Virus record (IMG/VR): IMGVR_UViG_3300042350_002797
Span: 300,555-364,554 of that record
Reading direction: 5' to 3' (one strand)
DNA: 64,000 nucleotides
In this document: piece by piece, positions 245-61,632 of the stretch
Layout of the letters: every line of letters starts with the position of its first letter
Position numbering within the stretch: the first letter of the stretch is position 1
Position numbers and translations under genes: made by a program
The notes under the pieces: model-generated
Told to the model about the DNA's origin: nothing
The model's database searches: none
The model's input: the letters and a program-made list of their open reading frames with translations, nothing else

Positions 245-270
245 AAAGGGCTCTTAGGAGCCCTTTTTTA
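245..270. terminator. Bidirectional intrinsic terminator
   Basis: aaagggctc-ttag-gagcccttt hairpin with an A-run before and a T-run after, between convergent genes. Confidence 0.85.
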
Positions 271-474: not shown

Positions 475-1113
475 TTATTCCCATGCTACCATCTTAAATC
501 GTTCTCGGGGTATGCCAAAGTAGTTACACTTCCACTCACTCTGCGCAAAGAAATCTAAATGATGCCATTCTTCTTTACGTCGTAATACATTTACGGCTGC
601 ATCTTCCCAATCAATGTTAGACAGTATAGGTTCCACACATTGTTTCATATCTAACATTTCTTCATAATTGAATCCATCATACTCCCAATGTAGCAATTCA
701 AAACAATTGCCGTAACAGTCCACATAATCCATACTGTAATCTAATCCCCATTTAGGACGTAAGCTGATCAGTTGCCATATACGAGGAAAGTATTTGGTCC
801 ACATTTTAAGTTGACTCAGTGCTTCATCTTTGTATCCCTTACGTTCAAATAGCAAACTATGATTTAGAATAGCACCTTCTAGTTTGTCTGATTGATCAAA
901 CCAAGGTTGTTTGATTGCTGTGCGGTGATTGCGATGTGCCTGTGTTTCAGTTAGATTATACTTGGCATACATCTTTTCCAATTCAGTTAGGTCGTAGCCG
1001 TTTTGATCAAACAGTTCTAAGTGATGTATCTTAGGAGCGAAGTATTCTGTTATAGGAACGGTCCAGTGACCTTCTGCGTTCCAGGAGTTGTTGGTTAAAA
1101 TTACATCTTTCAT
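475..1113 (-). CDS. Hypothetical protein
   Basis: ORF; likely start is ATG 1113, overlapping the stop of the upstream gene (ATGA). Confidence 0.7.
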   Translation of the reverse strand: MKDVILTNNSWNAEGHWTVPITEYFAPKIHHLELFDQNGYDLTELEKMYAKYNLTETQAHRNHRTAIKQPWFDQSDKLEGAILNHSLLFERKGYKDEALSQLKMWTKYFPRIWQLISLRPKWGLDYSMDYVDCYGNCFELLHWEYDGFNYEEMLDMKQCVEPILSNIDWEDAAVNVLRRKEEWHHLDFFAQSEWKCNYFGIPRERFKMVAWE

Positions 1114-1514
1114 TTGACAATTGGTCCGCCGGTGATCCAAAGTTCACAACTACGCTCGCCTGCACATTTAAAATGTAGTAGAGTACAATAACCCAAGTCT
1201 GCTGCTTCACGAGTCTTTTCTGCTTGGTATGCTTCGGCGCCCATGCCATCGTGTATACACTTATACATAGCATCCGTGATGTTAAAGGCAGCACAGTTAG
1301 CACACTTCATAGTTTTGGCGGTCTTTTCAATAATGCCCCATTGCTTGGCACTGTCTTTCCAGTATGTGCCTGGCTCGTCTGGGTTAGCAGGACCGTAGTG
1401 ATGTTTATCTATAGCAGTCTGTCTGTTCTTGACATTGACTTCTAGATCGTATGTAGCTATGGGACAGCCTTTGTTGGCTGCTTCTACTATGTTAATATAT
1501 TTTCTGTAGATCAT
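1110..1514 (-). CDS. Cys-rich hypothetical protein (possible metal/Fe-S binding)
   Basis: CANC...GYC...FKC...SCELW; translationally coupled to neighbours. Confidence 0.7.
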   Translation of the reverse strand: MIYRKYINIVEAANKGCPIATYDLEVNVKNRQTAIDKHHYGPANPDEPGTYWKDSAKQWGIIEKTAKTMKCANCAAFNITDAMYKCIHDGMGAEAYQAEKTREAADLGYCTLLHFKCAGERSCELWITGGPIVK

Positions 1515-2830
1515 CTCTGTTCAATCCAAGTCATTGCGGCCAAGGCCGCTTTGTTAGTGTTAGGACAGGCTATGGCCAATGTCAGTGTGTCGCTGACTGT
1601 GCCTAGACTGCCACGGCCAAGTTGATACACAGTATCTCTGTCTAGTCTGATGCCCGTGCCGCCACCACCAGCAATCACAAAACCACTGTCAAGATCAATA
1701 CCATTGGTATAACTGGTAGCACTAACATCGTATTGTGTGAATGCGTTGACATCGGGCATGTTTATAAAGTTAGCACCAGTTAAAGTAGCATTACGAACCA
1801 GTTTATAAAATACTGAAGTGTTGTCTATAGTAGCCGCTTGGAAGAATGTGGGCAACACGATTCCTTTCAGTGCAGAACTTTTTAATCTAATGCTGAGTAT
1901 GGGATAGAAAGTGTTGGCTGAGGCCATAGTGCGGCCTGTAATAGGACCAGTAACGTTCTGTGCGATACCCAGTTTGGTCGCTTCACCTTCTGATATAAGA
2001 CTGTTGGATCCTTGATAGAGATAGTGTGTGCCTGCTACACCTGTGAGATTTTCTATCTCTAGTCTAATGGGCAGGAATGGCGTTGAACTCCAAGGCACAG
2101 TGGCGATATTAGCGTGGTTGAATGTGTGTATGATATGTGTGAATCCATCAATCACATAGCCTATGGCAATCTGTCCAGCACCATACCACTCATATTCAAA
2201 ACTCACCATTTGAACTTTGTCAGGGTCGGCTGTTATGCCACTGTTACCTAGGCCATCTAATCGATCGCCGTTCCATTGGCTGCGTGGCACACGATTTTCA
2301 ACCAATATGCCTGATGTACTGGTACGCACTACCACATTATATTCTGGTAGTCCATCAGCACCTATGACTCCTGCGTCTTCAAAATAAAATCCATTGGCTT
2401 CATCAAATAGGCCAATGCGTCTGCGTATACCTGTTACTGGTGTTTGAAATCTCACAGCATAGGTCAACGAACTACTGCGTCCTGGAATATATCGCATGAC
2501 ATTGCGAGTCTGACGTATGACTTTGGATCCTAGTGTGTTAGTCACTGCCATATCCACCCAGTTGGTATTAGTGTTCCAAGTGGCGAATCCACCGTTAGCT
2601 GTTGCTTCATCCCAGACATCTGTTTCTTTGCCGTATTGGAACGTGTTGAAGAAGTCAGTTTGATAGTTTGATATCTTTAGTCTATTCTTGCTGGTATAAC
2701 CTGCCTGGCTGTCGAGAGTTCTGACAGTTGGCCGACCTTCAGCATCGTAGGTCATGGCCATGGTTAGGTCATTGGTGTTCGGCTCGTATGAATGAACGTA
2801 GTTGGTGCTGTTAGGATACATGTTACCCAT
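1511..2830 (-). CDS. Putative virion structural protein (beta-rich)
   Basis: 439 aa, Thr/Gly-rich, located in the late minus-strand operon. Confidence 0.6.
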   Translation of the reverse strand: MGNMYPNSTNYVHSYEPNTNDLTMAMTYDAEGRPTVRTLDSQAGYTSKNRLKISNYQTDFFNTFQYGKETDVWDEATANGGFATWNTNTNWVDMAVTNTLGSKVIRQTRNVMRYIPGRSSSLTYAVRFQTPVTGIRRRIGLFDEANGFYFEDAGVIGADGLPEYNVVVRTSTSGILVENRVPRSQWNGDRLDGLGNSGITADPDKVQMVSFEYEWYGAGQIAIGYVIDGFTHIIHTFNHANIATVPWSSTPFLPIRLEIENLTGVAGTHYLYQGSNSLISEGEATKLGIAQNVTGPITGRTMASANTFYPILSIRLKSSALKGIVLPTFFQAATIDNTSVFYKLVRNATLTGANFINMPDVNAFTQYDVSATSYTNGIDLDSGFVIAGGGGTGIRLDRDTVYQLGRGSLGTVSDTLTLAIACPNTNKAALAAMTWIEQR

Positions 2831-2833
2831 AGA

Positions 2834-3292
2834 TTAACTCCAAGGGCGGCCTTTTTTAAGACCTCCAACATTAGCATTATCTACCACAGTGTTGCCTGAA
2901 TATTTTGTTGGTAGGTTATCTCTATCGTAAGTGTTACCTAAACGATAATAACCTACTGTTACACTGCTGTCATCGCCCGGAGTACCTCTACGCTTTAACT
3001 GTGCTATTTCTAGTTTTTGTATTTGTCTACGCTCTCTGCTACCACTTTGCTCCGGTGTACAAATAATTAAATCACCGTCGACTATACCTGCTGCTGCACA
3101 GGTAGTAGAACTATCTCCTAGAGCTATGCTATTAATACTAGGATTTCCTTCTACACTAATGTTATAGTAGTCTGTAGGAAGCCCTTCGTCTCCAGCAATA
3201 GCTGTAATCAAATCATCCAAGGTTGCTGTAACCAGATCAATAGTTACATCATCTCTTATACCAGTCAGTCCTTTATAATACAGTGTAGCCAT
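2834..3292 (-). CDS. Protein with N-terminal ubiquitin-like (beta-grasp) domain
   Basis: LYYKGLTG...TLDDLITAIAGDEGLPTD...G...D..T....GI..GD.I aligns by eye with ubiquitin IFVKTLTG...TIENVKAKIQDKEGIPPD...G...DGRTL..YNI. Confidence 0.55.
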   Translation of the reverse strand: MATLYYKGLTGIRDDVTIDLVTATLDDLITAIAGDEGLPTDYYNISVEGNPSINSIALGDSSTTCAAAGIVDGDLIICTPEQSGSRERRQIQKLEIAQLKRRGTPGDDSSVTVGYYRLGNTYDRDNLPTKYSGNTVVDNANVGGLKKGRPWS

Positions 3293-3627
3293 TATTGCTC
3301 CCTATAAGGATTATGTTGATGTGCTGGATACATACTAGAGTGAGCAGTTCTAATGTCAGCAGGATGCTTTGGTTCGTTAGGGCCACCGCCAGCGTCTGTG
3401 GTTACAGAACTTACAGGAGCGTATTGAGGATTAGGAGCGTTGCTTAAAGGACTCATTTCTCCTGGATCTTGCAAGCCTGCAATCTGCTTCATTCTACGAA
3501 CTTCATCATCATAAGGATTGCTGTCGGATTCTGGTTCAGGTTTCACAACTATAACAGGTTCCGGAGCAGGGTTTTCTGCCTGATCCAGCATCTGTAATAC
3601 TGCTTGTATAAGTTCTTGTGCTCGCAT
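3292..3627 (-). CDS. Pro-rich hypothetical late protein
   Basis: ORF with GAGG RBS and TAAATA upstream; MRAQEL N-terminus. Confidence 0.7.
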   Translation of the reverse strand: MRAQELIQAVLQMLDQAENPAPEPVIVVKPEPESDSNPYDDEVRRMKQIAGLQDPGEMSPLSNAPNPQYAPVSSVTTDAGGGPNEPKHPADIRTAHSSMYPAHQHNPYREQ

Positions 3628-3666: not shown

Positions 3667-4530
3667 TTAATAATATCTGTGTGCTTTTAGATATTCTAAG
3701 TATTCTTCTACGCCCTGTTTTAAAGTTCTAAACTTGCTAATATCTATTCCGGCAAATGTAAGAGCACTTGTGTCTGCTTGTGTCCAAGTTTGATACTGTT
3801 TTTGTAAATCCTCAGGCATATCAATATATTTCTTTTTACCTTTTAAATTTTTCAGCATTTGATCAGCTACAGTTTCAAAATTATGCGCCGATCCTGTGCC
3901 TACGTCATACACACCAGGTTTGTAATTATTCATAAAATGCCAAATTACCTGAGCCACATCTTCTACATAGATGAAGTCTCTATAATAAGACATACTTTCT
4001 TGGAATAATTTTAATTGTTTATCTTGTTGTAGCTGATTATACCAATGAAATAGTGTACTAGCCATACGCCCTTTATGATATTCATTTGGGCCATACACAT
4101 TAAATAATCTTAGAATTACAGCGTTGTCTAATTCTTGTTCACTTACATATTTGCTAAATGCATATTGACTAGCAGGTCTATTATCTCCTAGTCCGTAAAC
4201 TCCTGCACTGCTGGTAAAGATAAAAGGTATATTCTTATACTGGCACCAATTATACCATTCTCGTGTGCTTAGTACGTTTCTATTGTAATAATCTTTCCAA
4301 TCTTTGTCTAAGGTACTAGAATTGGCACCAATGTGTATAACACAGTCTACGTCTACACCCCAGTCATCTGATCCTAACAACATCTTATACTCTTTGCCTA
4401 CGAGATTTTTATATTGTTCTGGATGAGGCAAGTCATCAAATATGATAATATCACTAATACCCTGTTGGTTAAGATATCCTAATACTACACTGCCAATAAA
4501 TCCTCCGGCACCTGTAAGTGCTATCTTCAT
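3667..4530 (-). CDS. hldD: ADP-L-glycero-D-manno-heptose 6-epimerase-like SDR
   Basis: GAGGFIG, HIGANSST, YAFSK, FNVYGPNEYHKGRMAS, RDFIYVEDV, YQTWTQAD. Confidence 0.85.
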   Translation of the reverse strand: MKIALTGAGGFIGSVVLGYLNQQGISDIIIFDDLPHPEQYKNLVGKEYKMLLGSDDWGVDVDCVIHIGANSSTLDKDWKDYYNRNVLSTREWYNWCQYKNIPFIFTSSAGVYGLGDNRPASQYAFSKYVSEQELDNAVILRLFNVYGPNEYHKGRMASTLFHWYNQLQQDKQLKLFQESMSYYRDFIYVEDVAQVIWHFMNNYKPGVYDVGTGSAHNFETVADQMLKNLKGKKKYIDMPEDLQKQYQTWTQADTSALTFAGIDISKFRTLKQGVEEYLEYLKAHRYY

Positions 4531-5285
4531 TGTATTTCCTCTAAAGTTGGAGCATATACTCCGATGTGCTGCACAGTAATGCTACTAGCTCGAACAGCAA
4601 ATGGAATAGATTTTTTTATACTACCTTGTTCTAGATATGCGTAAGTCAATGCGGCGAGAAAAGTATCTCCGGCGCCGCATACATCTGCTACTTCTATTTC
4701 AGGAGTAGAGTATATAACATCTTTATATTTTGCACCTCGAGAACCCAGAGTAATAATTAAATCTGTACATTCGCTCTCTGCTTCTTTATATTCTTTTTCG
4801 TTTATTTTAACAAAGATGCCTTCAAAATGTTGAAGATCAGTCATTTTAGTATCCATAAAAATAGGACCATTGAATTTTTGTTTAATTTTACTTACTACTG
4901 TATAATCTACAGACCCTTTAGCATAATCACTAATTACTACAGCATCATAGTTATTGATAGTTTTACAATCTATTTTTACCGGTCTACTGGTTTGATCTTG
5001 ATCTACTCTAATCAATTGCTGTTTACTTCTAATATCTATTAATCTAGTTTTAATACAAGTTTTAGCCCCATGTATAAAATCCACATGACATCCTAAACGT
5101 TGTAAATTTGTCTGTACATTAGCTGCCATACCTGGTTTAGTTTCTGAATATTTAAAATCAAAAACAGGTACAGGTCCTTCTGGACTTATTCTTGTAACGT
5201 CCCCATATTGATATTGATCAATACCATTATCCCCGATTAATAATATCTTGTATTGTTTTTGTAGTTGAGTGTTCTGTTCTATCAT
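4527..5285 (-). CDS. hldA: Heptose-7-phosphate kinase-like PfkB enzyme (HldE kinase domain, stand-alone)
   Basis: GDVTRISPEGPVPV, PGMAANV, ISDYAKG, DVCGAGDTF. Confidence 0.85.
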   Translation of the reverse strand: MIEQNTQLQKQYKILLIGDNGIDQYQYGDVTRISPEGPVPVFDFKYSETKPGMAANVQTNLQRLGCHVDFIHGAKTCIKTRLIDIRSKQQLIRVDQDQTSRPVKIDCKTINNYDAVVISDYAKGSVDYTVVSKIKQKFNGPIFMDTKMTDLQHFEGIFVKINEKEYKEAESECTDLIITLGSRGAKYKDVIYSTPEIEVADVCGAGDTFLAALTYAYLEQGSIKKSIPFAVRASSITVQHIGVYAPTLEEIQ

Positions 5286-5625
5286 AAAATATTACCTTAG
5301 GAACATGTTGTTCTCCTACAATACTACGACCTCGATAATCACTGCCTTTTACCATTATGTCTGGTTTGTATTCTTTAATAATGTTGATTAATTCTTCCTT
5401 AGAATCAAATAACATCACAGTGTCAACTGTTCTTAAATTATACAACATAAACCTTCTATCATCTTGATTATTAATTGGTCGAGTATTGCCTTTTAGTTCT
5501 TTAACTCTACGATCTGTATCGATACAAACTAATAATTGATCTCCTTGACTTCGTGCAAATTGCAATAGTTCCAAATGTCCTCTATGCAATATGTCAAATG
5601 TACCATTAACTATTACTTTGCTCAC
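5227..5625 (-). CDS. hldC: Heptose-1-phosphate nucleotidyltransferase-like (HldE domain II, stand-alone)
   Basis: NGTFDILHRGH (HxGH), LKGNTRPIN, KPDIMVKGSDY, STT. Confidence 0.85.
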   Translation of the reverse strand: MSKVIVNGTFDILHRGHLELLQFARSQGDQLLVCIDTDRRVKELKGNTRPINNQDDRRFMLYNLRTVDTVMLFDSKEELINIIKEYKPDIMVKGSDYRGRSIVGEQHVPKVIFYDRTEHSTTKTIQDIINRG

Positions 5626-5989
5626 TTTGACTATCTCCTGGAGCGATACGATAATTGTCTTCTACTGAATCAGCAGTGCTAACTTCGAAAATTATGCTGT
5701 TAGGTTGCAGTGCTTCTAATTGATGCGGCTGTAAAGGAGGATTGTGCCATACATCTCCTTCCTTAAGCAATTTTTCATGCATAGTGGCTGTTTTGGTATC
5801 TATATATCTAAGCATAAATTGTCCTGCATTTACAAACCAAGTTTCATCTTTTTCCTTATGAAAATGCATACTGAATTTAGCTCTAGCACGTTCAAACACC
5901 ATAAGTTTTCCACAATACTTGTCGTTAGTGGCCCAAATAATTTCATAGCCCCAACCTTTCTTAACCATACCTTCTAATCGTTGTGTCAT
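5606..5989 (-). CDS. Cupin sugar isomerase-like protein
   Basis: KGWGYE, SMHFHKEKDETW, PHQLEA, EVST cupin motifs. Confidence 0.7.
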   Translation of the reverse strand: MTQRLEGMVKKGWGYEIIWATNDKYCGKLMVFERARAKFSMHFHKEKDETWFVNAGQFMLRYIDTKTATMHEKLLKEGDVWHNPPLQPHQLEALQPNSIIFEVSTADSVEDNYRIAPGDSQSEQSNS

Positions 5990-8900
5990 TGTTTTTTCCT
6001 AAAATAGTAATCACCATCAGGCCCATTAGTACAAAATTGTCCAAGATTTTCAAAACCCAAAGATTCCATATAGGTTATTACTTCATCTTTTAAAGGAGCC
6101 CCTTTATTATATTCTACACTTTGACATTCTAAAATAACATGATTACAATTGGATAGAGTTTCTTGAGCACCTTTTAATACATCTAATTCAGCACCTTGCA
6201 CATCCATTTTGATTAAATCTGGTTTAGGTAATTTTTTTAAATTCACTACAGCATCTAAGGTAACAGTAGTATACTGTCGTCTATGACTGTCATTAAAGTA
6301 TTCATGTGCTTCAGCATTGACTTCTATGTTTTCTCTATAATAACTGTTACCGCCTGGATGATAAGTGTTTTGATAGAAATCTACTTGTCGACCAGTAGTG
6401 TCACTAAGAACTCCAATATGATATTGTAAATTTTGTTCTTTATAGATAAATTCACATTCTGGCATAGCTTCAAATACAACATATTCCGAGTCAGGCCAAA
6501 TACGTCGAGCTTCGTTGGTCCAGTGTAATACACATGCACCTATATCATAGACTACTTTAGGCTCTATAGATAAAGTTTTTAAATATTCTACATGCTGGTA
6601 TGGAATTAATCTTTGACTGCCTAATTCTCTTAATCGATCTGTATAATCTGTAATTTTGGGAATCGGAGCAACTTCTGGCGTAATGTTAAAATGTGTTTGA
6701 CCTATATGGCTACATACAATACTAGTATCTGCCCAAATAGTAAATCCTTTATCTTTAGCTTTGCGACAAAAATCTATATCTTCGCTAATTGTATGGCTAT
6801 GATCTAGTGCAGGATAATACATAAATTGTGGATATCCAATTGATCTAAACACTTCCGATTTAACTAGTACACAGCCAAACCCGCAAGCTGCTATTTCCAC
6901 TACGCCTCGATTTTGTATTTTATAGTAAGGTATATGATTCACACCACCAGTATTATTGTTTTCATATACTTCTAGTATTTGCTCAGGTTTACGTTGTCTG
7001 TAAATTCCAGTGACTACATCTTTGTTATGACTTAATAGTTTTTGTAATGTATCAGGAGCGAATGCCATATCTGCATCTACTGCCCAAAGATAATCGTATC
7101 CTTTGACTGCCCAATCTGCAATAAGATTGCGAACTTGATCTACTCTATATCCATAGAAGTACTGAAATGTGGTTTGGTAATCCTCGGGTATTATCTGATC
7201 GTAGATGCTCTTGAATGTCTCCGGCTCTATATTCCTGGCTGTGGGTATGGCTATTAGTATCTTTTTTTTTAACATAGTAGGTTTACTTATAATGTTTCTT
7301 GCTGTACGATTTTGTTCTTCTGCATTAACTTTGTAATCATTTAACGGATTGGTATCATTATAATTGTACACTATATCCTGTAAACATGCAACTTTATTTG
7401 GATCAGCTTGTTCAATTAGTGCATAAAATACTGCGCCATCTCCTCCTGCCCTGTACCATTCATTGTTTTCATTTTGAAATAAACTATCATCACAATTATC
7501 TATGAGATATTTCTTAAATGTTCTTAAATGAGTGTAAGGTAAAATCCAATTAAAATGGTGCTGTCTATATGTTTTGCTTTGTTTTACTTCTTCAGGATAT
7601 GGTTGGCTGATTAGGGGTATGTTATCAACCATACTCCAACAACTGCCATATGTAAATTCTAGATTGTCACTGTACAACGTATTGTAGTATGATAAAATAG
7701 TGTTGTCATTTATTAGGCTGTCGTCGCCATCTAGAATCATTATAATGCTGTTTTGTTCTAATGTTCTAAACAATTCTACTTGATTACGTACAGCACCTAG
7801 ATTTTGTTCATTAACAATCAGTGTTATCTTATTTTGTATATGTTGTGGTAAACTATCAATAAATCTATAGGCTACATCTACAGTATCATCTGTGCTAGCA
7901 TCATCTATTAAGTAATGATGATAGTTGTCATAGTCTTGACAGATTACACTTTCTATACAACGTTCAATGTAGTTTCTATTATTATAGAAAGTGCTGACTA
8001 TATTGATCTGCTGTTCTGTATTAGATTTATAGTTTTCTAACTCTACAACATTATGATAACGTCTATTATAAACTTTATGTACTCTACGATTTATTTTACT
8101 AACTTGACGATATTCTTCTAGGCTAAGATATAGTCCACAGGTTTTATAGAAAAACTGTTTCCATTGTAATGCCACAGTGTCCCATCCTGCTATAGGCTTG
8201 ACTACATTACAATAGTATTGTTTTTGTTGATGTAGATAAGTGTTATGATACGCCTGTACAGTTTGCTCGACAAATTTTTTAATTTGAGCTTCTCGATTTA
8301 TATCTGTGAAAAGAGAATTAGGTTCTATGGCATAATCAATAAGATAGCAACTACCTTCCAAGGCAACTTCTTCCAGCGCACCAAATCTACAAGTTATTAC
8401 TGGTGTGTTATAACATATACTTTCTAGTGTACTGATACCAAATGTTTCGGGAAAAGCAGCAGGATATATCATAAAGTTAGCAGCAGCTAATCTATCTGCT
8501 ATTTCACTCTGAGGAATGATACCTGTGAATTCTATATCTAGTTGTGCATTAGCAGGGTCATTGGCCATTTGACGCCAATCTAATTCTTGTTGGTCTGGTT
8601 GGCCATTTACTGTAAATCTATAATAGCCGCCTATTACAGTAAGTTTAGCTTCAGGTAATTGTTGTTTAACTCTAGGCCATATGTCTTTAACTAAAGGAAT
8701 CATACCTTTGGTTACACTGGCATTATAAACGAATCTGTTAGGATCTTTGGCTTTTATGTCGACTTCTTGTTTGTGCAAGTGAGCACCGTTGCGTGTGATA
8801 AAAGTTTTGTTTTTAAGAACTTCAAAGTTTCGTCTACGTCCGTGATGGCAATTTAGTACATAGGTCAAGTGCCAATCGCTGAGAGTAAAGATAGTAGTAA

Positions 8901-9336
8901 TTTTATTTGAAGTTGTTAGTTCTTCAATAAAATTATCGCCAAGACAAAATGTATCGTGCATCCATAGGATACGCTGTTTGGCCTTGCTTAGAATTCTTTC
9001 ATAGATGTTCTTACTGGCAAATGGTAGTGCTCTACTATCACCTACCTGTTGGAATTGATTATTGGTTAAGAATGGAATTACAGTTCTACTGCTGATCACA
9101 ATATCAAAATCATAATCATTGGATAGTGCTGATAATGGCAAGTAATTCACACCGTCGTATTGACCAGGTGTTGCATGATCCAAATTACAGTTATTGAACA
9201 CTGTAACTTCAAAATTTAATTTGGCAAGTTCTTTACTGATGTATGTTACGGCACTTTCTGAACCGCCAAGACCTTGTTTAAAAACGGTTGAGCCGTCGTA
9301 AGGTATACCAATTATATCTATAATAGCTAATTTCAT
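5986..9336 (-). CDS. Multidomain GT4 + GT2 + GT2-like + FkbM methyltransferase
   Basis: GGSE...PETFGISTLE (GT-B); LIDDASTD...LDGDD (GT-A); IAIPT...VDADM...GFGCVL...SEDIDFC (GT-A); YDIGA...IKMDVQGAELDVLKG (FkbM). Confidence 0.85.
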   Translation of the reverse strand: MKLAIIDIIGIPYDGSTVFKQGLGGSESAVTYISKELAKLNFEVTVFNNCNLDHATPGQYDGVNYLPLSALSNDYDFDIVISSRTVIPFLTNNQFQQVGDSRALPFASKNIYERILSKAKQRILWMHDTFCLGDNFIEELTTSNKITTIFTLSDWHLTYVLNCHHGRRRNFEVLKNKTFITRNGAHLHKQEVDIKAKDPNRFVYNASVTKGMIPLVKDIWPRVKQQLPEAKLTVIGGYYRFTVNGQPDQQELDWRQMANDPANAQLDIEFTGIIPQSEIADRLAAANFMIYPAAFPETFGISTLESICYNTPVITCRFGALEEVALEGSCYLIDYAIEPNSLFTDINREAQIKKFVEQTVQAYHNTYLHQQKQYYCNVVKPIAGWDTVALQWKQFFYKTCGLYLSLEEYRQVSKINRRVHKVYNRRYHNVVELENYKSNTEQQINIVSTFYNNRNYIERCIESVICQDYDNYHHYLIDDASTDDTVDVAYRFIDSLPQHIQNKITLIVNEQNLGAVRNQVELFRTLEQNSIIMILDGDDSLINDNTILSYYNTLYSDNLEFTYGSCWSMVDNIPLISQPYPEEVKQSKTYRQHHFNWILPYTHLRTFKKYLIDNCDDSLFQNENNEWYRAGGDGAVFYALIEQADPNKVACLQDIVYNYNDTNPLNDYKVNAEEQNRTARNIISKPTMLKKKILIAIPTARNIEPETFKSIYDQIIPEDYQTTFQYFYGYRVDQVRNLIADWAVKGYDYLWAVDADMAFAPDTLQKLLSHNKDVVTGIYRQRKPEQILEVYENNNTGGVNHIPYYKIQNRGVVEIAACGFGCVLVKSEVFRSIGYPQFMYYPALDHSHTISEDIDFCRKAKDKGFTIWADTSIVCSHIGQTHFNITPEVAPIPKITDYTDRLRELGSQRLIPYQHVEYLKTLSIEPKVVYDIGACVLHWTNEARRIWPDSEYVVFEAMPECEFIYKEQNLQYHIGVLSDTTGRQVDFYQNTYHPGGNSYYRENIEVNAEAHEYFNDSHRRQYTTVTLDAVVNLKKLPKPDLIKMDVQGAELDVLKGAQETLSNCNHVILECQSVEYNKGAPLKDEVITYMESLGFENLGQFCTNGPDGDYYFRKKQ

Positions 9337-12939: not shown

Positions 12940-15900
12940 TTATTTAATCTGTAAAGCTGCAATAGGCGGCGTAAAGTTTGTTGTATATCGCGCATATCCT
13001 TTAGTAATCCTAATGTCGTCCATGTATCCACTAAAATCATTAGTGCTAGTACTATATTGCATACCTACGCACAAAGGTAAGGCACTAGTTAAAGATGTAC
13101 TATTTGTTGCAGATGCTACTTGTACACCGTCTATGAACATTCTATTTGTAGCACTTGCTCTAGTAACTGCCACATGGTACCATTGTCCAGTAGTGATTCG
13201 AGATGCATTAGAATCCTGCAACAACACGGTTGATGCTCCTACTAGAAATGTTAAAGATGTTCCAGTTGATCTCCAATATAATTGCCAACTATTAGCATTG
13301 CCTGTGATCCAACGATCTAATATTATCCTGTTAGAAGTCAATGCATTGAAATATACCCAAAGTTCTATAGTGAAATCGCCAGTTCCAAAATCTAAAACTA
13401 TGTTGCTTGGCATAAACGCAGCATCATCTGTACCATCAAACAATAATGAAGTATTATTATATTTTGTAATGTTGCTAACTAGTCGTGTATTATTTAAGAT
13501 TTCAATGTTATTATTAGATGTATAATCAACAATTCCACTGTGTGTACCATTTAATAATAGTACTGTATGAGAAATAGCAGTTAATGGCGCCGTTGGTGGC
13601 ACAAAATTTGATGTATATAACGCTGTGCCTTTTAATACTCTTAAATTAGAAATATAACCATTTAATAAATTAGTATTATTGTATCCAGCACCAATTTTTG
13701 GTGGACCTATCACATAATTATTGGTATCAGTATAAGTCGATCCTACTTGTACTCCATTTAAAAACAATTTTGTACTCGATCCGCTACGTGCCACTGCTAT
13801 GTGATGCCATTGTCCAGAAACTAATGTAGGTCCAGTAATTCTATTCGCTCCAGCAAAATAAGTTAATGCTCCAGAACTTAAATATATAACTGGAGATATT
13901 GTAGTTGTGCCTGTTCTTGAATCATAAAGTGTTCCTGTAGTTCCTGAAATCAGATACAGATAACCTTCTATAGTAAAATCTAATGTACTAAGTGTAAATG
14001 CTGCATTACTTGGTAGATCTAAATAATCTCCAGTACCATCAAAGGAAAAACTTCCTCCTACAGTAGAAACACTATATTCACCATTATAACTAATATTATT
14101 TCCAAATGGGTTAAATGTTCTCGGAGCTGCATCACCATTAGCTGTTATAGTAAAATTATTTGTACTATTGTCTATAAAACGACTACTTTGGCATGTTAAT
14201 AAACTTGTGCCTGCTATTGCCGTTAGTGGAGTAGTACTTGGTGTAAAGTTTCCTGTGTAAACCGCTGTGCCTTTAACAATACGAAGGTCAGAAAGATACC
14301 CACCGTAGTTAAATGCTGTACTAGTGTATCGTTGACCTATTCTAAAAGTTGTTGAGGAAACATAATCAACTGTATCGGCCCAAGGTGTTCCTTCCTCGAC
14401 ACCATTTAAATATAACCTAGTTGTTCCGTTATTTCTGACGACGGCGGCATGATACCACTGATTCGCAGTTAGTGTTGTAGTTCCTGTTATCCTAGTTACA
14501 TTGGTTGTAAAATAGTATAGTCGATTGGAAGCGTCTATCCATATTAACGGATGTGCAGAAGTATCAGAGGTTCTCGGATCTATGATTGCCTTGACTGCTG
14601 AATTGATAATAGTTGGATACATCCAAAATTCAATTGTAAAATTTGCAGATGCTCCGAACGCAGTATCTACGTTCGATATGTCAACATAATCTCCCGTACC
14701 ATCAAAATAAGCACTATAACTTTTAGGTGTTATTCTTACAGGAGCAAATGGATTAAATTTTTGAACACTTACATCAGCATTTCGTGTAATAGAAATATTA
14801 TAAGGACTACTGTCTATTATTCTAGTACTTTGACAAGTTAATAGTCTAGTATTTGTAATAACCTCAAGTGGTGTTGTAGAAGGTGTAAAGTTTGTTGTAT
14901 AAAGACTCGTGCCTACTACTAACCTTAGATTACTGATATATCCAGTATGATTTCTTTGAGTTGTTCCATCGTTTGATTTACCTATGTTTAAAGCTCCTGC
15001 TGGATAATTATTTGTATCTGAGTAATTAGATCCAACCTGTACTCCGTTTATGAACATTTTAGTAACATTGCTCGATCGAGATACAGCAACATGTTGCCAA
15101 GTACGTAGTAACACAGCAGAAGTGCCAGAAGTTATTCTGTTACCTGCTGCAACATACCAAGCATATCCATTTACGTTAGTTAATTCGATCACCGGTTGTA
15201 TTACAGATGCACCGTTTGTTCCAGCTCGTTGATCATATATAGTTGCGTTAGTAGGTAAAGATGCTAGTTCTACATAAATCCAAAACTCTAAAGTAAAATC
15301 TGATGTGCCGATAGTTAATGCAGAATTACTAAGACTTAAAAAATCTCCAGTACCATCAAAGTAATTACTCCATCCAGTTAGACTAAATGGACTGCGTGAT
15401 CCCTGTGTTGCATTTCCAAATCTAGTTACAGTATGATCTAATCCGGAATTGTCTAACACACGAGTATTAGTTTCACTTACTCTATTTTGTAGTGTAAGTA
15501 AACTAGTATTTGTTATTGCTGTCAGTGGCTGTGTGGGTGGAGTAAAGGCAGCAGTGTAAACAGCAGTGCCTTTTACTATCCTAACATTAGATATATATCC
15601 ATTGTATGTTTCAGAACTTCGACTTATAGTCCAGTTAGCAACACTTGAGGCAATAGTACCAGAATTAGTAACAGGAGTACCAACACTTACTCCATTCACA
15701 TACAAAGAAAAATTAGAACCATTTCTAACACATGCTACATGATACCAAGTCGAAGCTCCAGGTAATGTATGATTAATATTAATAGATGTTCCTGGGTTAG
15801 CAAAAAATTGCAATTGTCCACTGCTAATTCTTAATAAAAATCTAGTCGGAGCGTTATTCCAAGCATCCAGTATACATTGTGTACCTGCTGTTGTATTCGG

Positions 15901-17733
15901 ATATATCCAACATTCTAACGTGAAATTACCAGATCCAAAATCAAAAGCTGAGTTACCAGGAACTGTTATGACGTCTGCTGATCCGTCAAAATAACCGCTA
16001 CCTGTAATTAAATCAGTTTCTTCAAATTTACCAAAATTTGAAATTAGTGTGCCGTTGTACCCAGTCACAGCTAAAGCATTTACACCAGTATCTAAAAATC
16101 TATTACTTTGCAGTGCAAGAACTGTCGTATTGGCGCCAGCTGTTAACTTACTTGTAGGTACAACAAAAGATGCTCCTGTATATAAACACTCGTTTTTTGT
16201 TACTCGAAAGTTACTGATGTAACCTTTAGCACTTGTTTGTGCCACATTACCAGTTCTAACACCTATAGTAAACGTTCCAGATGCTAAACCATAAGATGAT
16301 GTAAAAAAACTTCCTGTAGTTTCTTCCCACTGACGCACTCCATCAACATACACTCTTAAGGACGTTCCATCTCTACATAGTGCATAGTGACTCCATTTGT
16401 TAGCTGGAGGAGCAGTGCCGCCGCTTTTATATAATCCGCCTGCTCCATACATCATATTATTGCCAGCAGGGTGAACCATATAACAAGTGAATTCTCCACT
16501 ACTACCTCCGTCTCCAGGAGTATTTGTAAATATCACAGGATAAGCAGGTCCTGAAGGATCTCTAAAAACAAAACATTCAATAGTAAAATGTCCTGTACCA
16601 AACTGCACAGCTGTTCCATTAGGAAACCCAATATAATCATCAACTCCATCAAGATACGCACTATATTGAGTTTCGTAAGGGCTAAATGAAGACGGTCTAG
16701 CATCAGTGTAAGTGAGCGTGAGTTTGTTTGTACTAGAATCTTGTATCCAGAAACTAGATGATTTATATCCACTCAATAACAACGAAGTAACTGTAAAAAA
16801 CGGATCTCCTGGTAGAACTACAGACCAAGAAATATTTCTTGTCGCTGATCTATTTGTGATATTTGCTGTAGCAGTTAATGTAGTTGAAATAGATTCTAAA
16901 ACAGTTGGTGTTCCTGAAATAGTATCACCACTAAGACTGATTCCGGACGGTAGCACATCAGCAGAATAGGTTATAGACTTACCGGCTGCACTGGTAGCCA
17001 ATAAAGTTATAGGATCAATAGGAATAGTTTGCTCCAACTCATAATTTGAATTATTTGCAGGAGCATTCCATGTAACTACATCAGTGTTGATAGTAAGACT
17101 ATAACTTCTAAATGAATCTTGTCCTTCTTGATCTGTAGCTTTTACTGTAAAACTGTAAGTAGTTATTCCACTATCTACGGGACTAGTTCCACTTAACACA
17201 CCAGAACTAGATAGCGTAACACCAGATGGTAAAGTTCCGGCACTTATAGTATAAGTAACCGCACTGTCGCTTGTTGCTGAAATTGTTTCGTTAATAGAAT
17301 TAGTTTCATAAAAAGATCCTATACTGCCAGCTGCTGGACTTACAAACGTCGGAACTCCACTGTACACTATACCTGGAACTAATAAAGCTGCTCTCCCGTT
17401 GCCATTATTAACTAATAATGAATATGTTCCGCTGGCTTTAGCAATACTAGTAAAAGCTAATCTTGTAGGATCTAAGAATGTAACTGTGTTTATAGTAGTA
17501 CCGTCTAGTTGAACAGTAGCATTTGGACTAAATCCTGCGCCATGGATTACTATAGTTTGACTACCGGCAAGATCAAGCGCAACATCGTCTAATGGTACAT
17601 ATGTTCCTAATTCACAAACATCGTAGCTTTGAATTGTCGGGGACGGTGTTTGTGTCTCATAGAAATGTTGAGGAAGTTTGGTTAAGCCTTCTGAATCATT
17701 AGTTCGTCGACCTATTCTTCCTTTGTTATACAT
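12940..17733 (-). CDS. Large LamG/ConA-like repeat virion protein with IPT/Ig-like N-terminus
   Basis: Six [YF]DG.gDy...FT.E.W...W.H.A..R...GY.S..R...G repeats; LPSGVTLSSSGVLSGT Ig-like motifs. Confidence 0.85.
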   Translation of the reverse strand: MYNKGRIGRRTNDSEGLTKLPQHFYETQTPSPTIQSYDVCELGTYVPLDDVALDLAGSQTIVIHGAGFSPNATVQLDGTTINTVTFLDPTRLAFTSIAKASGTYSLLVNNGNGRAALLVPGIVYSGVPTFVSPAAGSIGSFYETNSINETISATSDSAVTYTISAGTLPSGVTLSSSGVLSGTSPVDSGITTYSFTVKATDQEGQDSFRSYSLTINTDVVTWNAPANNSNYELEQTIPIDPITLLATSAAGKSITYSADVLPSGISLSGDTISGTPTVLESISTTLTATANITNRSATRNISWSVVLPGDPFFTVTSLLLSGYKSSSFWIQDSSTNKLTLTYTDARPSSFSPYETQYSAYLDGVDDYIGFPNGTAVQFGTGHFTIECFVFRDPSGPAYPVIFTNTPGDGGSSGEFTCYMVHPAGNNMMYGAGGLYKSGGTAPPANKWSHYALCRDGTSLRVYVDGVRQWEETTGSFFTSSYGLASGTFTIGVRTGNVAQTSAKGYISNFRVTKNECLYTGASFVVPTSKLTAGANTTVLALQSNRFLDTGVNALAVTGYNGTLISNFGKFEETDLITGSGYFDGSADVITVPGNSAFDFGSGNFTLECWIYPNTTAGTQCILDAWNNAPTRFLLRISSGQLQFFANPGTSININHTLPGASTWYHVACVRNGSNFSLYVNGVSVGTPVTNSGTIASSVANWTISRSSETYNGYISNVRIVKGTAVYTAAFTPPTQPLTAITNTSLLTLQNRVSETNTRVLDNSGLDHTVTRFGNATQGSRSPFSLTGWSNYFDGTGDFLSLSNSALTIGTSDFTLEFWIYVELASLPTNATIYDQRAGTNGASVIQPVIELTNVNGYAWYVAAGNRITSGTSAVLLRTWQHVAVSRSSNVTKMFINGVQVGSNYSDTNNYPAGALNIGKSNDGTTQRNHTGYISNLRLVVGTSLYTTNFTPSTTPLEVITNTRLLTCQSTRIIDSSPYNISITRNADVSVQKFNPFAPVRITPKSYSAYFDGTGDYVDISNVDTAFGASANFTIEFWMYPTIINSAVKAIIDPRTSDTSAHPLIWIDASNRLYYFTTNVTRITGTTTLTANQWYHAAVVRNNGTTRLYLNGVEEGTPWADTVDYVSSTTFRIGQRYTSTAFNYGGYLSDLRIVKGTAVYTGNFTPSTTPLTAIAGTSLLTCQSSRFIDNSTNNFTITANGDAAPRTFNPFGNNISYNGEYSVSTVGGSFSFDGTGDYLDLPSNAAFTLSTLDFTIEGYLYLISGTTGTLYDSRTGTTTISPVIYLSSGALTYFAGANRITGPTLVSGQWHHIAVARSGSSTKLFLNGVQVGSTYTDTNNYVIGPPKIGAGYNNTNLLNGYISNLRVLKGTALYTSNFVPPTAPLTAISHTVLLLNGTHSGIVDYTSNNNIEILNNTRLVSNITKYNNTSLLFDGTDDAAFMPSNIVLDFGTGDFTIELWVYFNALTSNRIILDRWITGNANSWQLYWRSTGTSLTFLVGASTVLLQDSNASRITTGQWYHVAVTRASATNRMFIDGVQVASATNSTSLTSALPLCVGMQYSTSTNDFSGYMDDIRITKGYARYTTNFTPPIAALQIK

Positions 17734-18100: not shown

Positions 18101-19996
18101 TTATCCTCCGAATATCATGGCCATTGCTATAGACTTTCCTGAAGTGGCTGCTGATCCGGTATACCCTGTTGTACCAATAAATCCACTAGCAGCAAGTTCT
18201 ACCCATTGTAGTCCGTCACCGTCATCTGTCCAAATAAATTCTATTCCTAAAGACGAATCAAACCATCTATCTCCTATAGCTGGATTTGCAGGAGGATTAT
18301 CAGAATATGTATAAGTGCTTTCACCTTGACTACCAGTATAACCTATATTTCCAATATCTCCAGTTCTTGAAAAAGTAAGAAACATATCTTCGTTGTTTGT
18401 AAACGGACTAGTGCTTCCTGCTACATAAGTGATTGTTAAATTTACATATGTGGAACTATCTGTTACAGACCCTGATATGGAATAAAATGTAAACGTCTGA
18501 GGATTTGGTTGACTAGTAAATTTTACATAGCCTTTTACAGTTGAATTACTGTCTGCTACTGTTAATAGATACGGTTTAATGTTGTTTGTATAATAATCAA
18601 ATTGACTTATAGCCATCTCAGTGGCTAAGGACAGGTTTGAGTTGTTGACGGCAAATTTTCCAGATCCTGGACTAACATTAAGTGTTGTTGTAGTATTAAA
18701 ATTATATCCAAAAGTGGCGCCGCCAAAATTTCCTGCCAATCCTTTTGAACCAGTGTAACCTATATTTCCCTGACTTCCAGTATAACCAACATCGCCTCGA
18801 CTGCCGCCATACCCGGTATCACCTTGTGATCCGGTATATCCGATATCTCCTTGACTACCAGTGTAGCCGAAACTTCCTGTATATCCGGTATCACCTTGTG
18901 ATCCGGTATATCCGATATCTCCTTGACTACCAGTATAACCTTGACTTCCTGTATAACCAAAACTTCCTGTATATCCGATGTCGCCTTGACTACCGACAAA
19001 TCCAGTTGTTCCTTGACTTCCTGTATAACCTTGACTTCCTGTATAACCTTGAGCTCCATCTGCACCAACATATCCAGCTGCTCCGGTACTACCAGTATAT
19101 CCGATGTCGCCTTGACTACCAGTATAACCAAAACTTCCTGTATATCCGATGTCGCCTTGACTGCCGGTATAACCAAAACTTCCTGTATAGCCAATATCTC
19201 CTTGACTGCCGGTATAGCCAATATCTCCTTGACTACCTGTATAACCAAAACTTCCTGTATATCCGATATCACCTTGTGATCCGGTATATCCAATATCACC
19301 TTTATCTCCTGTACGAGCAAAAGTAATAATTATATCTTCATTATTTGAAAAAGAACTAGCAGTTCCAGAAACATAACTGACTGGTACAGTAAAATACGTA
19401 GAATTATTTGTACTATTAGCAGTGATAGTGAATATAGCGAAATCGTCACTGTTCGCTTTGTTGCTGATTCGTATATGTCCTTTAAGCTGACTAGTGCTTG
19501 CATCGATAGTAGTTAGATATGCATCTAGATTAGCATTATTATCGTCAGTGTCTTGAATATATAAAACACTAGCGGTAGATATATCATTCTGGTTTAGTTT
19601 TAATTTACCTGTTCCAGGAGCAGAATTAGTTGTATTAGTGTCAAATGTATAATCAAAAGTTACCCCGCCAAAATTTCCTTGAGGGCCTTGACTTCCAGTA
19701 TAGCCGAAACTACCAGTATAACCAAAACTTCCTGTATAGCCAATATCACCTTGACTGCCTGTATATCCAATATCACCTTGGCTACCAGTATAACCTTTAA
19801 AGTCATTAGCATAGGTAGTAATGTCGATCCAAGTCCTAGTGCCATCTGTGTCACCAATAAGTACACTAGAATCTACTTGTGGTAAGCCCAAATCAGGTTC
19901 GGCATTACTGACATCTAAATAGTCATAGCGATCTTGATCAAGACTAGCACCTGATTTCTTTTTCTGTTTGCCGCTAACAAGACGACTTTTACTCAT
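18101..19996 (-). CDS. Collagen-like fibre protein with two related globular domains
   Basis: GYTGSQGDI repeats; duplicated GNFGG.TF.Y.F...F.RTGD.G domain. Confidence 0.8.
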   Translation of the reverse strand: MSKSRLVSGKQKKKSGASLDQDRYDYLDVSNAEPDLGLPQVDSSVLIGDTDGTRTWIDITTYANDFKGYTGSQGDIGYTGSQGDIGYTGSFGYTGSFGYTGSQGPQGNFGGVTFDYTFDTNTTNSAPGTGKLKLNQNDISTASVLYIQDTDDNNANLDAYLTTIDASTSQLKGHIRISNKANSDDFAIFTITANSTNNSTYFTVPVSYVSGTASSFSNNEDIIITFARTGDKGDIGYTGSQGDIGYTGSFGYTGSQGDIGYTGSQGDIGYTGSFGYTGSQGDIGYTGSFGYTGSQGDIGYTGSTGAAGYVGADGAQGYTGSQGYTGSQGTTGFVGSQGDIGYTGSFGYTGSQGYTGSQGDIGYTGSQGDTGYTGSFGYTGSQGDIGYTGSQGDTGYGGSRGDVGYTGSQGNIGYTGSKGLAGNFGGATFGYNFNTTTTLNVSPGSGKFAVNNSNLSLATEMAISQFDYYTNNIKPYLLTVADSNSTVKGYVKFTSQPNPQTFTFYSISGSVTDSSTYVNLTITYVAGSTSPFTNNEDMFLTFSRTGDIGNIGYTGSQGESTYTYSDNPPANPAIGDRWFDSSLGIEFIWTDDGDGLQWVELAASGFIGTTGYTGSAATSGKSIAMAMIFGG

Positions 19997-61469: not shown

Positions 61470-61473
61470 ATAT

Positions 61474-61550: not shown

Positions 61551-61554
61551 AGTA

Positions 61555-61632
<78 letters not shown>

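What the first reader, a model, noticed from the sequence alone, without database searches (positions are those of the whole stretch)
2834..3292. Ubiquitin-like domain in a phage late protein
Seen: residues 1-80 follow the ubiquitin pattern (KxLTG, T.dd....I...EG.P.D, G, D..T....gI). They are fused to a C-terminal segment ending LPTKYSGNTVVDNANVGGLKKGRPWS; the GG is internal, not terminal. Established: bacterial Bil (ISG15-like) systems conjugate Ubl proteins to phage tail proteins, and type II CBASS uses E1/E2 chemistry. Inference: a virion beta-grasp module, or a decoy for Ubl-conjugation defences.
Basis: partly seen in the sequence, partly recalled or inferred. Interest (0 to 1): 0.65.

Follow-up and report, generated by a model that had tools for sequence, protein, structure and literature searches.

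The report
Ubiquitin-fold handle on phage lectin proteins
A 152-residue protein of a 364-kb lake-water phage starts with a real ubiquitin-type domain, joined to a conserved "handle" that relatives use to carry sugar-binding heads; it looks like a built-in part of a virion appendage protein, not a tag that gets attached to other proteins.

Summary
The ORF lies on the minus strand (window 2834-3292). Residues 1-84 model as a ubiquitin fold (pLDDT 80-92), and every top structural match is ubiquitin, SUMO, NEDD8 or ISG15 (Z 11.8, rmsd 1.4 A over 73 residues).

The domain links by sequence to the ubiquitin family. Some relatives carry an N-domain that passes Pfam PF00240, one about half identical to ubiquitin.

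It is not a conjugatable modifier. The internal GG is replaceable and lies about 60 residues after the fold. No glycine at the fold's end is conserved across the wider family. The genome shows no E1 or JAB.

The invariant element is residues 85-152: a helix plus LPTKY...GRPW. Among 150 cluster representatives, this module, with or without the Ubl, forms the N-terminus of proteins ending in ConA-like lectin (LamG), PA14/GLEYA or other adhesin domains.

Here the gene sits in a four-gene cassette found in all 7 Ubl-bearing contexts. The next gene encodes a ConA-like lectin-fold protein whose cyanophage homologues are annotated as virion structural.

Best reading: an integral ubiquitin-domain adaptor of a lectin-type virion appendage (confidence about 0.45). 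A cleavable assembly timer like lambda gpI is the main rival. The defence-decoy idea has no support.

The parts
2834..3292 (-). Gene B: 152-aa Ubl + handle protein (stop TAA at 2834-2836)
   Evidence: ORF list and translation; 212 full-length homologues by word search and 418 by profile search; single copy in the 364-kb genome.
3041..3292 (-). Residues 1-84: ubiquitin-family beta-grasp domain
   Evidence: AF2 pLDDT 80-92; Foldseek and VIA-align top hits are ubiquitin/SUMO/NEDD8/ISG15; hhalign to PF00240-positive N-domains of relatives gives prob 91%, E 9.5e-7.
2987..3037 (-). Residues 86-102: conserved basic amphipathic helix (RRQIQKLEIAQLKRR)
   Evidence: Helix in the model at pLDDT about 76-80; Q90, K93, L94, A97 and R101 invariant or nearly so across close and distant relatives.
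2939..2986 (-). Residues 103-118: variable, partly deletable linker
   Evidence: Absent or shortened in many homologues; pLDDT below 50.
2837..2938 (-). Residues 119-152: conserved tail YYR..NTYD...LPTKY.GN..DN.N.GGL..GRPW(S)
   Evidence: R149-P150-W151 present in 120/120 close and 135/135 distant aligned members; GG143-144 in 94% of close members and about 75-80% of distant ones. Predicted disordered as a monomer. No relative among solved structures.
3292..3627 (-). Gene A: 111-aa protein, translationally coupled to B
   Evidence: One-base overlap with B in every Ubl-bearing locus read. 34-50% identical to the upstream gene in L005, L006, L008, L009, L010 and L014. No family hit.
1511..2830 (-). 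Gene C: 439-aa phrog_1645 protein (cyanophage homologues annotated virion structural), two-lobed ConA-like lectin/GH16-like fold; residues 1-45 (2696-2830) form a disordered N-terminal peptide conserved across relatives
   Evidence: phrog_1645 E 1e-137. 57% identical to proteins annotated as virion structural in cyanomyoviruses. AF2 model pLDDT 78. Foldseek hits: TM4 gp23 receptor-binding domain, SraP lectin module, legume lectins. The N-terminal peptide is kept even where the body is swapped.
1110..1514 (-). Gene D: 134-aa Cys-rich protein, last conserved member of the cassette
   Evidence: 64-90% identical in L005, L006, L009, L010 and L014. Homologues are annotated 'high potential iron-sulfur protein' in other phages.
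245..266 (.). Bidirectional terminator-like hairpin closing the minus-strand gene string
   Evidence: Consensus scan only.

Best explanation
Gene B encodes an integral (non-conjugated) ubiquitin-domain protein that acts as the adaptor or 'handle' of a lectin-type virion appendage of a freshwater jumbo tailed phage.

Inferred mechanism:
- Residues 85-152 (helix plus the RPW-ended tail) are disordered alone. They are the universally conserved docking element and would become ordered on binding a conserved site on the particle or on a partner.
- In roughly half of the related protein clusters this element is the N-terminal stalk of ConA-like lectin (LamG), PA14/GLEYA, ILEI or LRR heads.
- In this phage the head is missing from B. 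A ConA-like lectin-fold protein (gene C; its cyanophage homologues are annotated virion structural) is encoded immediately downstream.
- The N-terminal ubiquitin domain is an accessory protein-protein interaction or folding cap. By the sequence register with ubiquitin (not checked on coordinates), its most conserved exposed positions (L9, S46, I/V76, C78) correspond to ubiquitin's L8/I44/H68/V70 patch.
- The Ubl probably engages the cassette partners that co-occur with it (gene A and/or the conserved N-terminal peptide of gene C).

Shown: the fold, the architecture, the conservation, the synteny, and the absence of detectable conjugation enzymes.
Inferred: virion location, what the handle docks to, and what the Ubl binds.
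For: Fold:
- AF2 model and two independent structure searches.

Family link:
- Six of 76 long relatives hit PF00240. P0211 scores 49.9 bits, with E about 3e-14 to single ubiquitin chains and half or more of the aligned residues identical in the printed alignment.
- hhalign of window-type N-domains against those N-domains gives 91%.

Not a modifier:
- The GG is internal and replaceable, while RPW is invariant.
- G84 at the fold's end is kept in 115/121 close members but only about 40% of distant ones, and is absent from PF00240-type members.
- No ThiF, Prok-JAB or JAB in the genome.

Architecture of the 150 best cluster representatives:
- 44 are Ubl+handle+cargo, 33 are Ubl+handle alone, and 32 are handle+cargo without the Ubl.
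- Among 76 long members, cargo is Laminin_G_3 in 36, GLEYA in 18, PA14 in 17, ILEI in 4 and DUF285 in 1.
- ESM Atlas structural neighbours are Uroviricota clusters, including a PA14/GLEYA one.

Context:
- The A-B-C-D cassette occurs in 7 of 7 Ubl-bearing loci.
- Gene C is phrog_1645 with a ConA-like lectin fold.
- The same strand carries tail-fibre and baseplate-like genes at 12-33 kb.

Selection:
- Variants fall at third codon positions.
Against: - No direct evidence that B is in the virion; no proteomics, and no isolate in the phage collection carries it.
- The handle has no solved or annotated relative, so 'docking element' is inferred from conservation and domain position only.
- L014 carries B with its own LamG head and still has gene C downstream, so B is not simply the split-off N-terminus of C.
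- The link between the Ubl and genes A/C rests on few loci: 7 with the Ubl, and 2 independent Ubl-less contexts with DNA. One Ubl-less context, P0272, has an unread 137-aa overlapping upstream gene.
- The patch correspondence to ubiquitin was read from the sequence register, not measured on coordinates.
Confidence: 0.45

Rival explanations
1. Assembly timer of the lambda gpI type. The N-terminal Ubl is a removable cap on a structural module. A protease cuts after the fold (here after Q82-x-G84) once the handle is correctly docked, enforcing the order of assembly. Only residues 85-152 would stay in the particle.
For: - Lambda gpI is an N-terminal Ubl plus a structural domain, and gpK is reported to cleave the Ubl off to order tail-tip assembly (PMC1779556; PMC12908700).
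- G84 lies four residues after strand 5, where ubiquitin has G75/G76, and is kept in 115/121 close homologues; Q82 is kept in 119/121.
- Ubl-less relatives start about 10 residues before the helix, at the same boundary.
- A small HExxH protein follows the Ubl-less genes and has a homologue about 5 kb from B in this genome.
Against: - No JAB/MPN peptidase in the genome.
- The glycine is not conserved in distant members (about 40%) and is absent in the PF00240-type members (LILVSKQARQ).
- No sequence relation to lambda gpI (hhalign prob 0.5%).
- The HExxH protein sits next to the Ubl-LESS genes, the opposite of what a Ubl-removing protease would predict.
Confidence: 0.2
2. Not a virion part. B is an intracellular or released adaptor that carries lectin-type heads for another purpose, such as binding host envelope glycans during infection or lysis, or regulating the neighbouring glycosylation enzymes.
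For: - No virion proteomics exist for B.
- ADP-heptose-like genes and a 1116-aa glycosyltransferase/methyltransferase lie directly upstream on the same strand.
- The cassette sits away from the T4-like neck, sheath and terminase genes, which lie at 33-47 kb of the genome.
Against: - Homologues of gene C, immediately downstream, are annotated as virion structural in cyanophage records.
- The closest solved structure to C is a phage receptor-binding domain.
- LamG and PA14 heads on conserved N-terminal handles are a typical layout for phage fibres and decorations (my knowledge, not tested here).
Confidence: 0.15
3. Counter-defence decoy or inhibitor. The phage Ubl mimics the host Ubl of Bil-type or CBASS-type conjugation systems and titrates their E1/E2 or deubiquitinase.
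For: - Bil systems conjugate a Ubl to the phage central tail fibre (bioRxiv 10.1101/2023.09.04.556158).
- The fold is ubiquitin-like.
Against: - No exposed C-terminal glycine adjacent to the fold for E1 adenylation.
- The Ubl is always tied in cis to the handle, and often to lectin heads, which a soluble decoy does not need.
- The conserved position in a structural-type cassette is unlike the variable early-gene islands where anti-defence genes usually sit (my knowledge, not tested here).
- Top structural matches are eukaryotic-type ubiquitin/SUMO; the model was not compared directly with bacterial Bil or CBASS Ubls.
Confidence: 0.05
4. A true conjugatable modifier precursor, processed after V142-G143-G144 and attached to targets through G144.
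For: GG is present in 94% of close homologues and is followed by an 8-residue extension, superficially like Ubl precursors.
Against: - The GG lies about 60 residues beyond strand 5, behind a helix and a disordered linker.
- It is replaced by GA, ST or TT in members that keep RPW.
- In about half of the clusters the chain continues past RPW into large lectin domains.
- No E1 was detected; the E2 search is uninformative because its control found nothing anywhere.
Confidence: 0.03

Closest known systems
Ubiquitin-domain proteins with an integral N-terminal UBL (type II Ubls such as Rad23, Dsk2 and Ddi1)
   Same: An N-terminal ubiquitin-family fold with no free GG, permanently joined to the rest of the protein and used as an interaction module. 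UBL domains of Dsk2 and Ddi2 are among the best structural matches (Z 10.6-11.2).
   Different: Those are eukaryotic proteasome shuttle factors with UBA or other partner domains. Here the partner is an uncharacterised RPW-ended handle and lectin-type heads in a tailed phage.
Phage lambda tail assembly protein I (gpI/TAPI) with gpK
   Same: A phage protein with an N-terminal Ubl joined by a low-complexity linker to a structural module, encoded among appendage genes (PMC1779556; PMC12908700).
   Different: - gpI's Ubl was described as related to ThiS/MoaD, has a conserved C-terminal glycine, and is paired with a JAB+NlpC/P60 peptidase that removes it.
- Here there is no JAB, no family-wide glycine and no sequence relation (hhalign 0.5%).
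- The best structural and sequence neighbours here are ubiquitin/SUMO/NEDD8.
Bacterial Bil (ISG15-like) and type II CBASS Ubl conjugation systems
   Same: Ubiquitin-like folds acting at the phage-bacterium interface; Bil targets a tail fibre (10.1101/2023.09.04.556158).
   Different: Those are host-encoded operons with E1, E2 and a deubiquitinase, and a Ubl (or cyclase) with a reactive C-terminal glycine. None of these features is present here.
Viral ubiquitins of eukaryotic viruses (baculovirus v-ubi, giant-virus ubiquitin fusions)
   Same: Virus-encoded PF00240-type domains, sometimes associated with particles. A Nucleocytoviricota ubiquitin cluster is among the Atlas structural neighbours.
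   Different: Those viruses infect hosts that have a ubiquitin system. This is a Uroviricota phage, with T4-like terminase, neck and sheath homologues and Uroviricota neighbour clusters.

Membership tests
Ubiquitin-like beta-grasp fold (ubiquitin superfamily) | b-b-a-b-b-3(10)-b topology that superposes on ubiquitin | tested here: met
   AF2 elements E2-7, E13-18, H25-36, E43-47, E50-54, H55-58, E75-80. Z 11.8, rmsd 1.4 A over 73 residues; TM by target about 0.8.
Pfam PF00240 'ubiquitin' family (sequence membership) | Score above the gathering threshold (25.4 bits), or a demonstrable homology link to members | tested here: inconclusive
   The window protein has no Pfam hit at E <= 0.1 (genome search). 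Relatives with the same architecture pass: P0211 49.9 bits, P0206 30.8 bits. hhalign between the two N-domain groups gives 91%, E 9.5e-7. The N-domain profile finds only ubiquitin/ISG15 in PDB, but single-domain E is 0.04-0.15.
Conjugatable Ubl modifiers (ubiquitin, SUMO, NEDD8, ISG15, BilA, SAMPs) | C-terminal Gly(-Gly) directly after strand 5, free or exposed by trimming a short extension | tested here: not met
   Strand 5 ends at residue 80 and the chain continues for 72 residues. The GG is at 143-144 and is replaceable. G84 is not conserved family-wide.
Conjugatable Ubl modifiers | Cognate E1 (ThiF-type), E2 and deubiquitinase encoded with it | tested here: not met
   No ThiF, Prok-JAB or JAB in the 364-kb genome, with positive controls working. 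The E2 (UQ_con) search was negative, but its control rang nowhere, so it is uninformative. Host-encoded enzymes cannot be excluded.
Lambda tail assembly protein I (TAPI/gpI) | Sequence relation to gpI | tested here: not met
   hhalign of the N-domain or whole-protein alignment against lambda gpI gives prob 0.5% and 0.2%. No Pfam hit of any kind.
Lambda tail assembly protein I (TAPI/gpI) | Adjacent JAB (+NlpC/P60) peptidase gene (gpK) and host-specificity protein gene (gpJ) | tested here: not met
   The neighbours are gene A (unknown), lectin-fold gene C and Cys-rich gene D. No JAB in the genome. NlpC/P60 was not searched.
Integral ubiquitin-domain proteins (UBL fused in cis, not cleaved) | A UBL joined to other modules without a processing glycine | tested here: met
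   The architecture is kept in 77 of 150 representatives (Ubl+handle, with or without cargo). PF00240-type members lack any glycine at the junction. Whether the junction is cleaved in vivo cannot be tested here.
Virion structural proteins | Physical presence in purified particles | not testable with these tools
   Indirect only: adjacency to phrog_1645, whose homologues are annotated virion structural in cyanophage records, and lectin-head fusions.

The most novel reading that the evidence does not exclude
Tailed phages of lakes carry a previously undescribed family of eukaryotic-type ubiquitin domains. Some members are about half identical to ubiquitin, suggesting capture from a eukaryote or a giant virus. 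The domains are built permanently into virion appendages as the cap of a new RPW-ended attachment module for lectin heads. This would be a use of the ubiquitin fold in particle architecture without any conjugation chemistry, distinct from the ThiS/MoaD-related, JAB-cleaved Ubl of lambda gpI.
Probability: 0.35. Interest if true: 0.65.

Novelty: new variant of a known kind. Interest (0 to 1): 0.55.

Why it matters
Ubiquitin-like domains in phages are known so far mainly from lambda gpI, where the Ubl is clipped off by a JAB peptidase to order tail-tip assembly. On the bacterial side they are known from defence systems that tag phage tails.

This family is large (418 profile hits among 50%-identity cluster representatives), and the window's own stretch recurs in lake-water metagenomes from at least 19 studies. 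It has three notable features:
- It links by sequence to ubiquitin itself.
- It has no detectable conjugation or deubiquitination partner.
- It is wired to a new, invariant attachment module that carries carbohydrate-binding heads.

If the virion location holds, it gives a handle for finding receptor-binding or decoration proteins in uncultured jumbo phages: look for the RPW module. It would also be a natural example of ubiquitin used as a structural or assembly cap, and a case study of the ubiquitin family moving between domains of life.

Tried and rejected
- Pfam, PHROGs and NCBIfam scans of B, A and D: nothing.
- megablast and tblastn of the region and of B against 50,697 phage records: no match, so no cultured carrier. 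The handle alone also found no match.
- Comparisons of B with the cyanophage neighbour P0003 and of gene A with P0002: unrelated.
- Paralogue search in the genome by phmmer, profile search and an RPW motif scan: none.
- Profile of the handle against PDB: only chance-level hits.
- ESM Atlas search by features: no usable hit.
- Complex prediction of gene C with B: no verdict (ipSAE 0.00 in two runs, controls not run). This is neither for nor against binding.
- T4-type late promoter TATAAATA: depleted (1 against 7.9 expected). CTAAATA has one site upstream of gene A but is also below expectation overall, so no promoter claim is made.
- Read-through fusion of B and C: the TAA stop, then TCT, then C's ATG are in the same frame. 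Rejected as chance, because L005 is out of frame and in L014 the two genes overlap by one base. The window's suppressor-like tRNA reads TAG, not TAA.
- RNA evidence: one metatranscriptome contig covers only 180 nt of gene C, none covers B, and DNA carry-over cannot be excluded.
It was rerun using stored files only.

Full report
WHAT IS THERE

The finding's coordinates hold a 152-codon ORF on the minus strand (window 2834-3292). The plus strand is closed by many stops. The ATG has an AGGGAG ribosome-binding site seven bases upstream and shares one base with the TAA stop of the preceding 111-codon gene.

The window is the last 64 kb of a 364,554-bp virus record rated complete. The stretch occurs in lake-water metagenomes from at least 19 runs and studies. 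Co-occurring strain variants across the helix/linker region differ almost only at third codon positions: 14 of the 15 listed sites by my count. The ORF is therefore a real gene under purifying selection.

THE FOLD

With a 40-sequence alignment of homologues (A1), AlphaFold2 gives strands 2-7 and 13-18, helix 25-36, strands 43-47 and 50-54, a short helix 55-58 and strand 75-80, all at pLDDT 80-92. A helix follows at 86-102, and a low-confidence tail at 103-152.

- Foldseek against PDB returns ubiquitin, SUMO, NEDD8 and ISG15 as the best matches (E about 3e-5, TM by target about 0.8).
- A search that does not depend on Foldseek gives Z 11.8 and rmsd 1.4 A over 73 residues to ubiquitin. Dsk2, Ddi2, Hub1 and UBX domains follow.
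- The stated refutation criterion ("the predicted fold is not beta-grasp") is not met.

IS IT RELATED TO UBIQUITIN BY SEQUENCE?

The window protein itself has no Pfam hit. A profile of its N-domain alone (A3) retrieves only ubiquitin and ISG15 chains from PDB, through the KxLTG...EG(L/I)P stretch. Single-domain E-values are weak, 0.04-0.15.

The wider family closes the gap:
- Six of 76 long relatives hit PF00240.
- P0211 scores 49.9 bits and matches single ubiquitin chains at about E 3e-14, with half or more of the aligned residues identical in the printed alignment. It has the same downstream modules.
- P0206 also passes the Pfam threshold.
- A profile-profile comparison of the window-type N-domains with these PF00240-type N-domains gives 91% probability, E 9.5e-7.

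I conclude that the domain is a diverged member of the ubiquitin family, not merely a beta-grasp look-alike.

NOT A CONJUGATABLE MODIFIER

- It is present in 94% of close homologues and about 75-80% of distant ones, and is replaced by GA, ST or TT in members that keep everything else.
- R149-P150-W151 is present in every aligned member: 120/120 close and 135/135 distant.
- A glycine at the true end of the fold (G84, after Q82) is kept in 115/121 close homologues. It drops to about 40% among distant representatives and is missing from the PF00240-type members.
- The genome has no ThiF-type E1, no Prok-JAB and no JAB/MPN, with positive controls working.
- The E2 search is uninformative because its control found nothing anywhere.

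THE INFORMATIVE RESULT: DOMAIN ARCHITECTURE

A profile search of 1.84 billion cluster representatives found 418 relatives. The best 150 break down as follows:
- 33 look like the window protein (Ubl + helix + tail).
- 44 continue after RPW into a C-terminal extension.
- 32 have only the helix + tail at their N-terminus, followed by an extension, with no Ubl.
- A few carry other N-terminal parts.
- The rest include short proteins, probably fragments.

Among 76 long members, the extensions are Laminin_G_3 (ConA-like lectin) in 36, GLEYA in 18, PA14 in 17, ILEI in 4 and DUF285 in 1.

The conserved unit is therefore the 65-70-residue "handle" (A6). It acts as the N-terminal stalk of carbohydrate-binding or adhesin-type heads. 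The Ubl is an optional cap on it.

The handle has no relative among solved structures or curated families. It is single-copy in this genome. Structural neighbours in the ESM Atlas are Uroviricota clusters, including a PA14/GLEYA one of 140 members.

CONTEXT

In all seven Ubl-bearing loci read (window, L005, L006, L008, L009, L010, L014) the gene sits in the same cassette:
- Gene A (94-135 aa) always overlaps B by one base. Its C-terminal half is conserved.
- B follows.
- Gene C (289-540 aa) comes next.
- In six of the seven loci a Cys-rich gene D (134-140 aa, 64-90% identical) follows C. In L008 an unrelated 97-aa gene follows instead.

Gene C here is phrog_1645. It is 57% identical to proteins annotated as virion structural in Synechococcus myoviruses. 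The terminase, by contrast, is only 32% identical to its cyanophage counterpart.

The gene C model (pLDDT 78) is a two-lobed ConA-like lectin/GH16-like fold. Its best PDB matches are the receptor-binding domain of mycobacteriophage TM4 gp23, the SraP lectin module and legume lectins.

The first 40-45 residues of C are disordered. They are conserved even where the body of C is replaced by an unrelated one.

In two independent Ubl-less contexts (L012/L013 and L018/L019), genes A and C are absent, and a small HExxH protein follows. Genes A and C thus travel with the Ubl, and the handle does not need them. The sample is small. One further Ubl-less context, P0272, has an unread overlapping upstream gene.

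Upstream on the same strand lie ADP-heptose-like enzymes, a 1116-aa glycosyltransferase/methyltransferase, and tail-fibre and baseplate-like genes.

MECHANISM

My best reading (about 0.45) is an integral ubiquitin-domain adaptor of a lectin-type virion appendage.
- The handle docks to a conserved site.
- The Ubl offers a second interface. Its most conserved exposed positions (L9, S46, I/V76, C78) correspond, by the sequence register with ubiquitin, to the L8/I44/H68/V70 patch.
- That interface may bind gene A or the N-terminal peptide of C.
- This last step is inference.

A co-folding test of B with C gave no verdict and counts neither way.

The main rival (about 0.2) is a lambda gpI-like removable cap. 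There, the Ubl is cut off by gpK to order assembly (PMC1779556; PMC12908700).
- The Q82-x-G84 motif in the close family and the domain boundary of Ubl-less relatives fit this reading.
- The lack of a JAB, the loss of the glycine in distant members and the absence of any sequence relation to gpI (hhalign 0.5%) speak against it.

A non-virion role (about 0.15), a defence decoy (about 0.05) and a true modifier (about 0.03) are less likely, for the reasons given under the rival explanations.

NOVELTY

Ubl domains on phage structural proteins are known from lambda gpI. This is a different lineage: ubiquitin-type rather than ThiS/MoaD-related. It has a different partner module and no peptidase partner.

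My six full-text literature searches turned up no description of phage ubiquitin domains joined to lectin heads. A jumbo-phage survey they returned mentions ubiquitin only in another context. I rate it a new variant of a known kind, with interest 0.55.

LIMITS
- There is no proteomic or expression evidence for B. The only RNA-library contig lies in gene C.
- The host is unknown.

Noticed in passing
window 49642-49717 (+); 61385-61632 (+): ARAGORN calls a tRNA with anticodon CTA ('tRNA-Pyl', so amber-suppressor-like), plus a cluster of tRNA-Leu(TAA), tRNA-Arg(TCT) and tRNA-Met. A TAG-reading tRNA in a jumbo phage could point to stop-codon recoding of some genes. Gene B ends in TAA, so it is not affected.
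   Followed up: no
window 3667-9336 (-): Directly upstream of the cassette lie an HldD-like ADP-heptose 6-epimerase, HldE-like kinase and adenylyltransferase halves, a cupin, and a 1116-aa protein with glycosyltransferase and FkbM methyltransferase parts. All score below the curated cut-offs. This looks like a phage-encoded nucleotide-heptose pathway next to lectin-fold virion genes.
   Followed up: partly
window 1511-2830 (-): Gene C is 57% identical to a protein annotated as virion structural in cyanomyoviruses (S-CREM1, S-RIM2), while this phage's large terminase is only 32% identical to the cyanophage one. That suggests exchange of this gene between phage groups, or unusually strong constraint. 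The fold is ConA-like lectin/GH16-like.
   Followed up: partly
window 1110-1514 (-): Gene D is a 134-aa Cys-rich protein, 90% identical in a 384-kb relative. Its homologues are annotated 'high potential iron-sulfur protein' in other phages. In Actinomycetia phage DSL-LC01 it sits next to genes annotated as capsid maturation protease.
   Followed up: partly
L001 3046-3570 and L002 1652-2188 (cyanophages S-CREM1, S-RIM2): Two genes upstream of the gene C homologue, cyanomyoviruses encode a ~175-aa phrog_682 protein that ends ...VGG at its very C-terminus. The S-CREM1 record names it 'ubiquitin-like modifier-activating enzyme'. It shows no similarity to gene B, and its fold could not be tested.
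   Followed up: partly
own genome G000:C1:298077-298484 (-), about 2.1 kb before the window start; L012 4808-5218; L018 1697-2107: A 135-aa protein with an HExxH motif is homologous (30-32% identity) to the gene immediately downstream of the Ubl-less handle+lectin genes in other contigs. It may be a small metallopeptidase linked to this system.
   Followed up: partly
window 2828-2836 (-): The TAA stop of gene B is followed by TCT and then the ATG of gene C in the same reading frame. A read-through product would resemble the fused relatives. The frame relation is not kept in L005 or L014, so it is probably chance.
   Followed up: yes
window 22611-32183 (-) and 12940-17733 (-): There is a 3190-codon ORF and a 1597-codon ORF. 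The 1597-codon one carries six repeats matching baseplate-wedge/virion-structural PHROGs. Collagen-like tail-fibre genes lie at 18101-19996 and 32186-33364.
   Followed up: no
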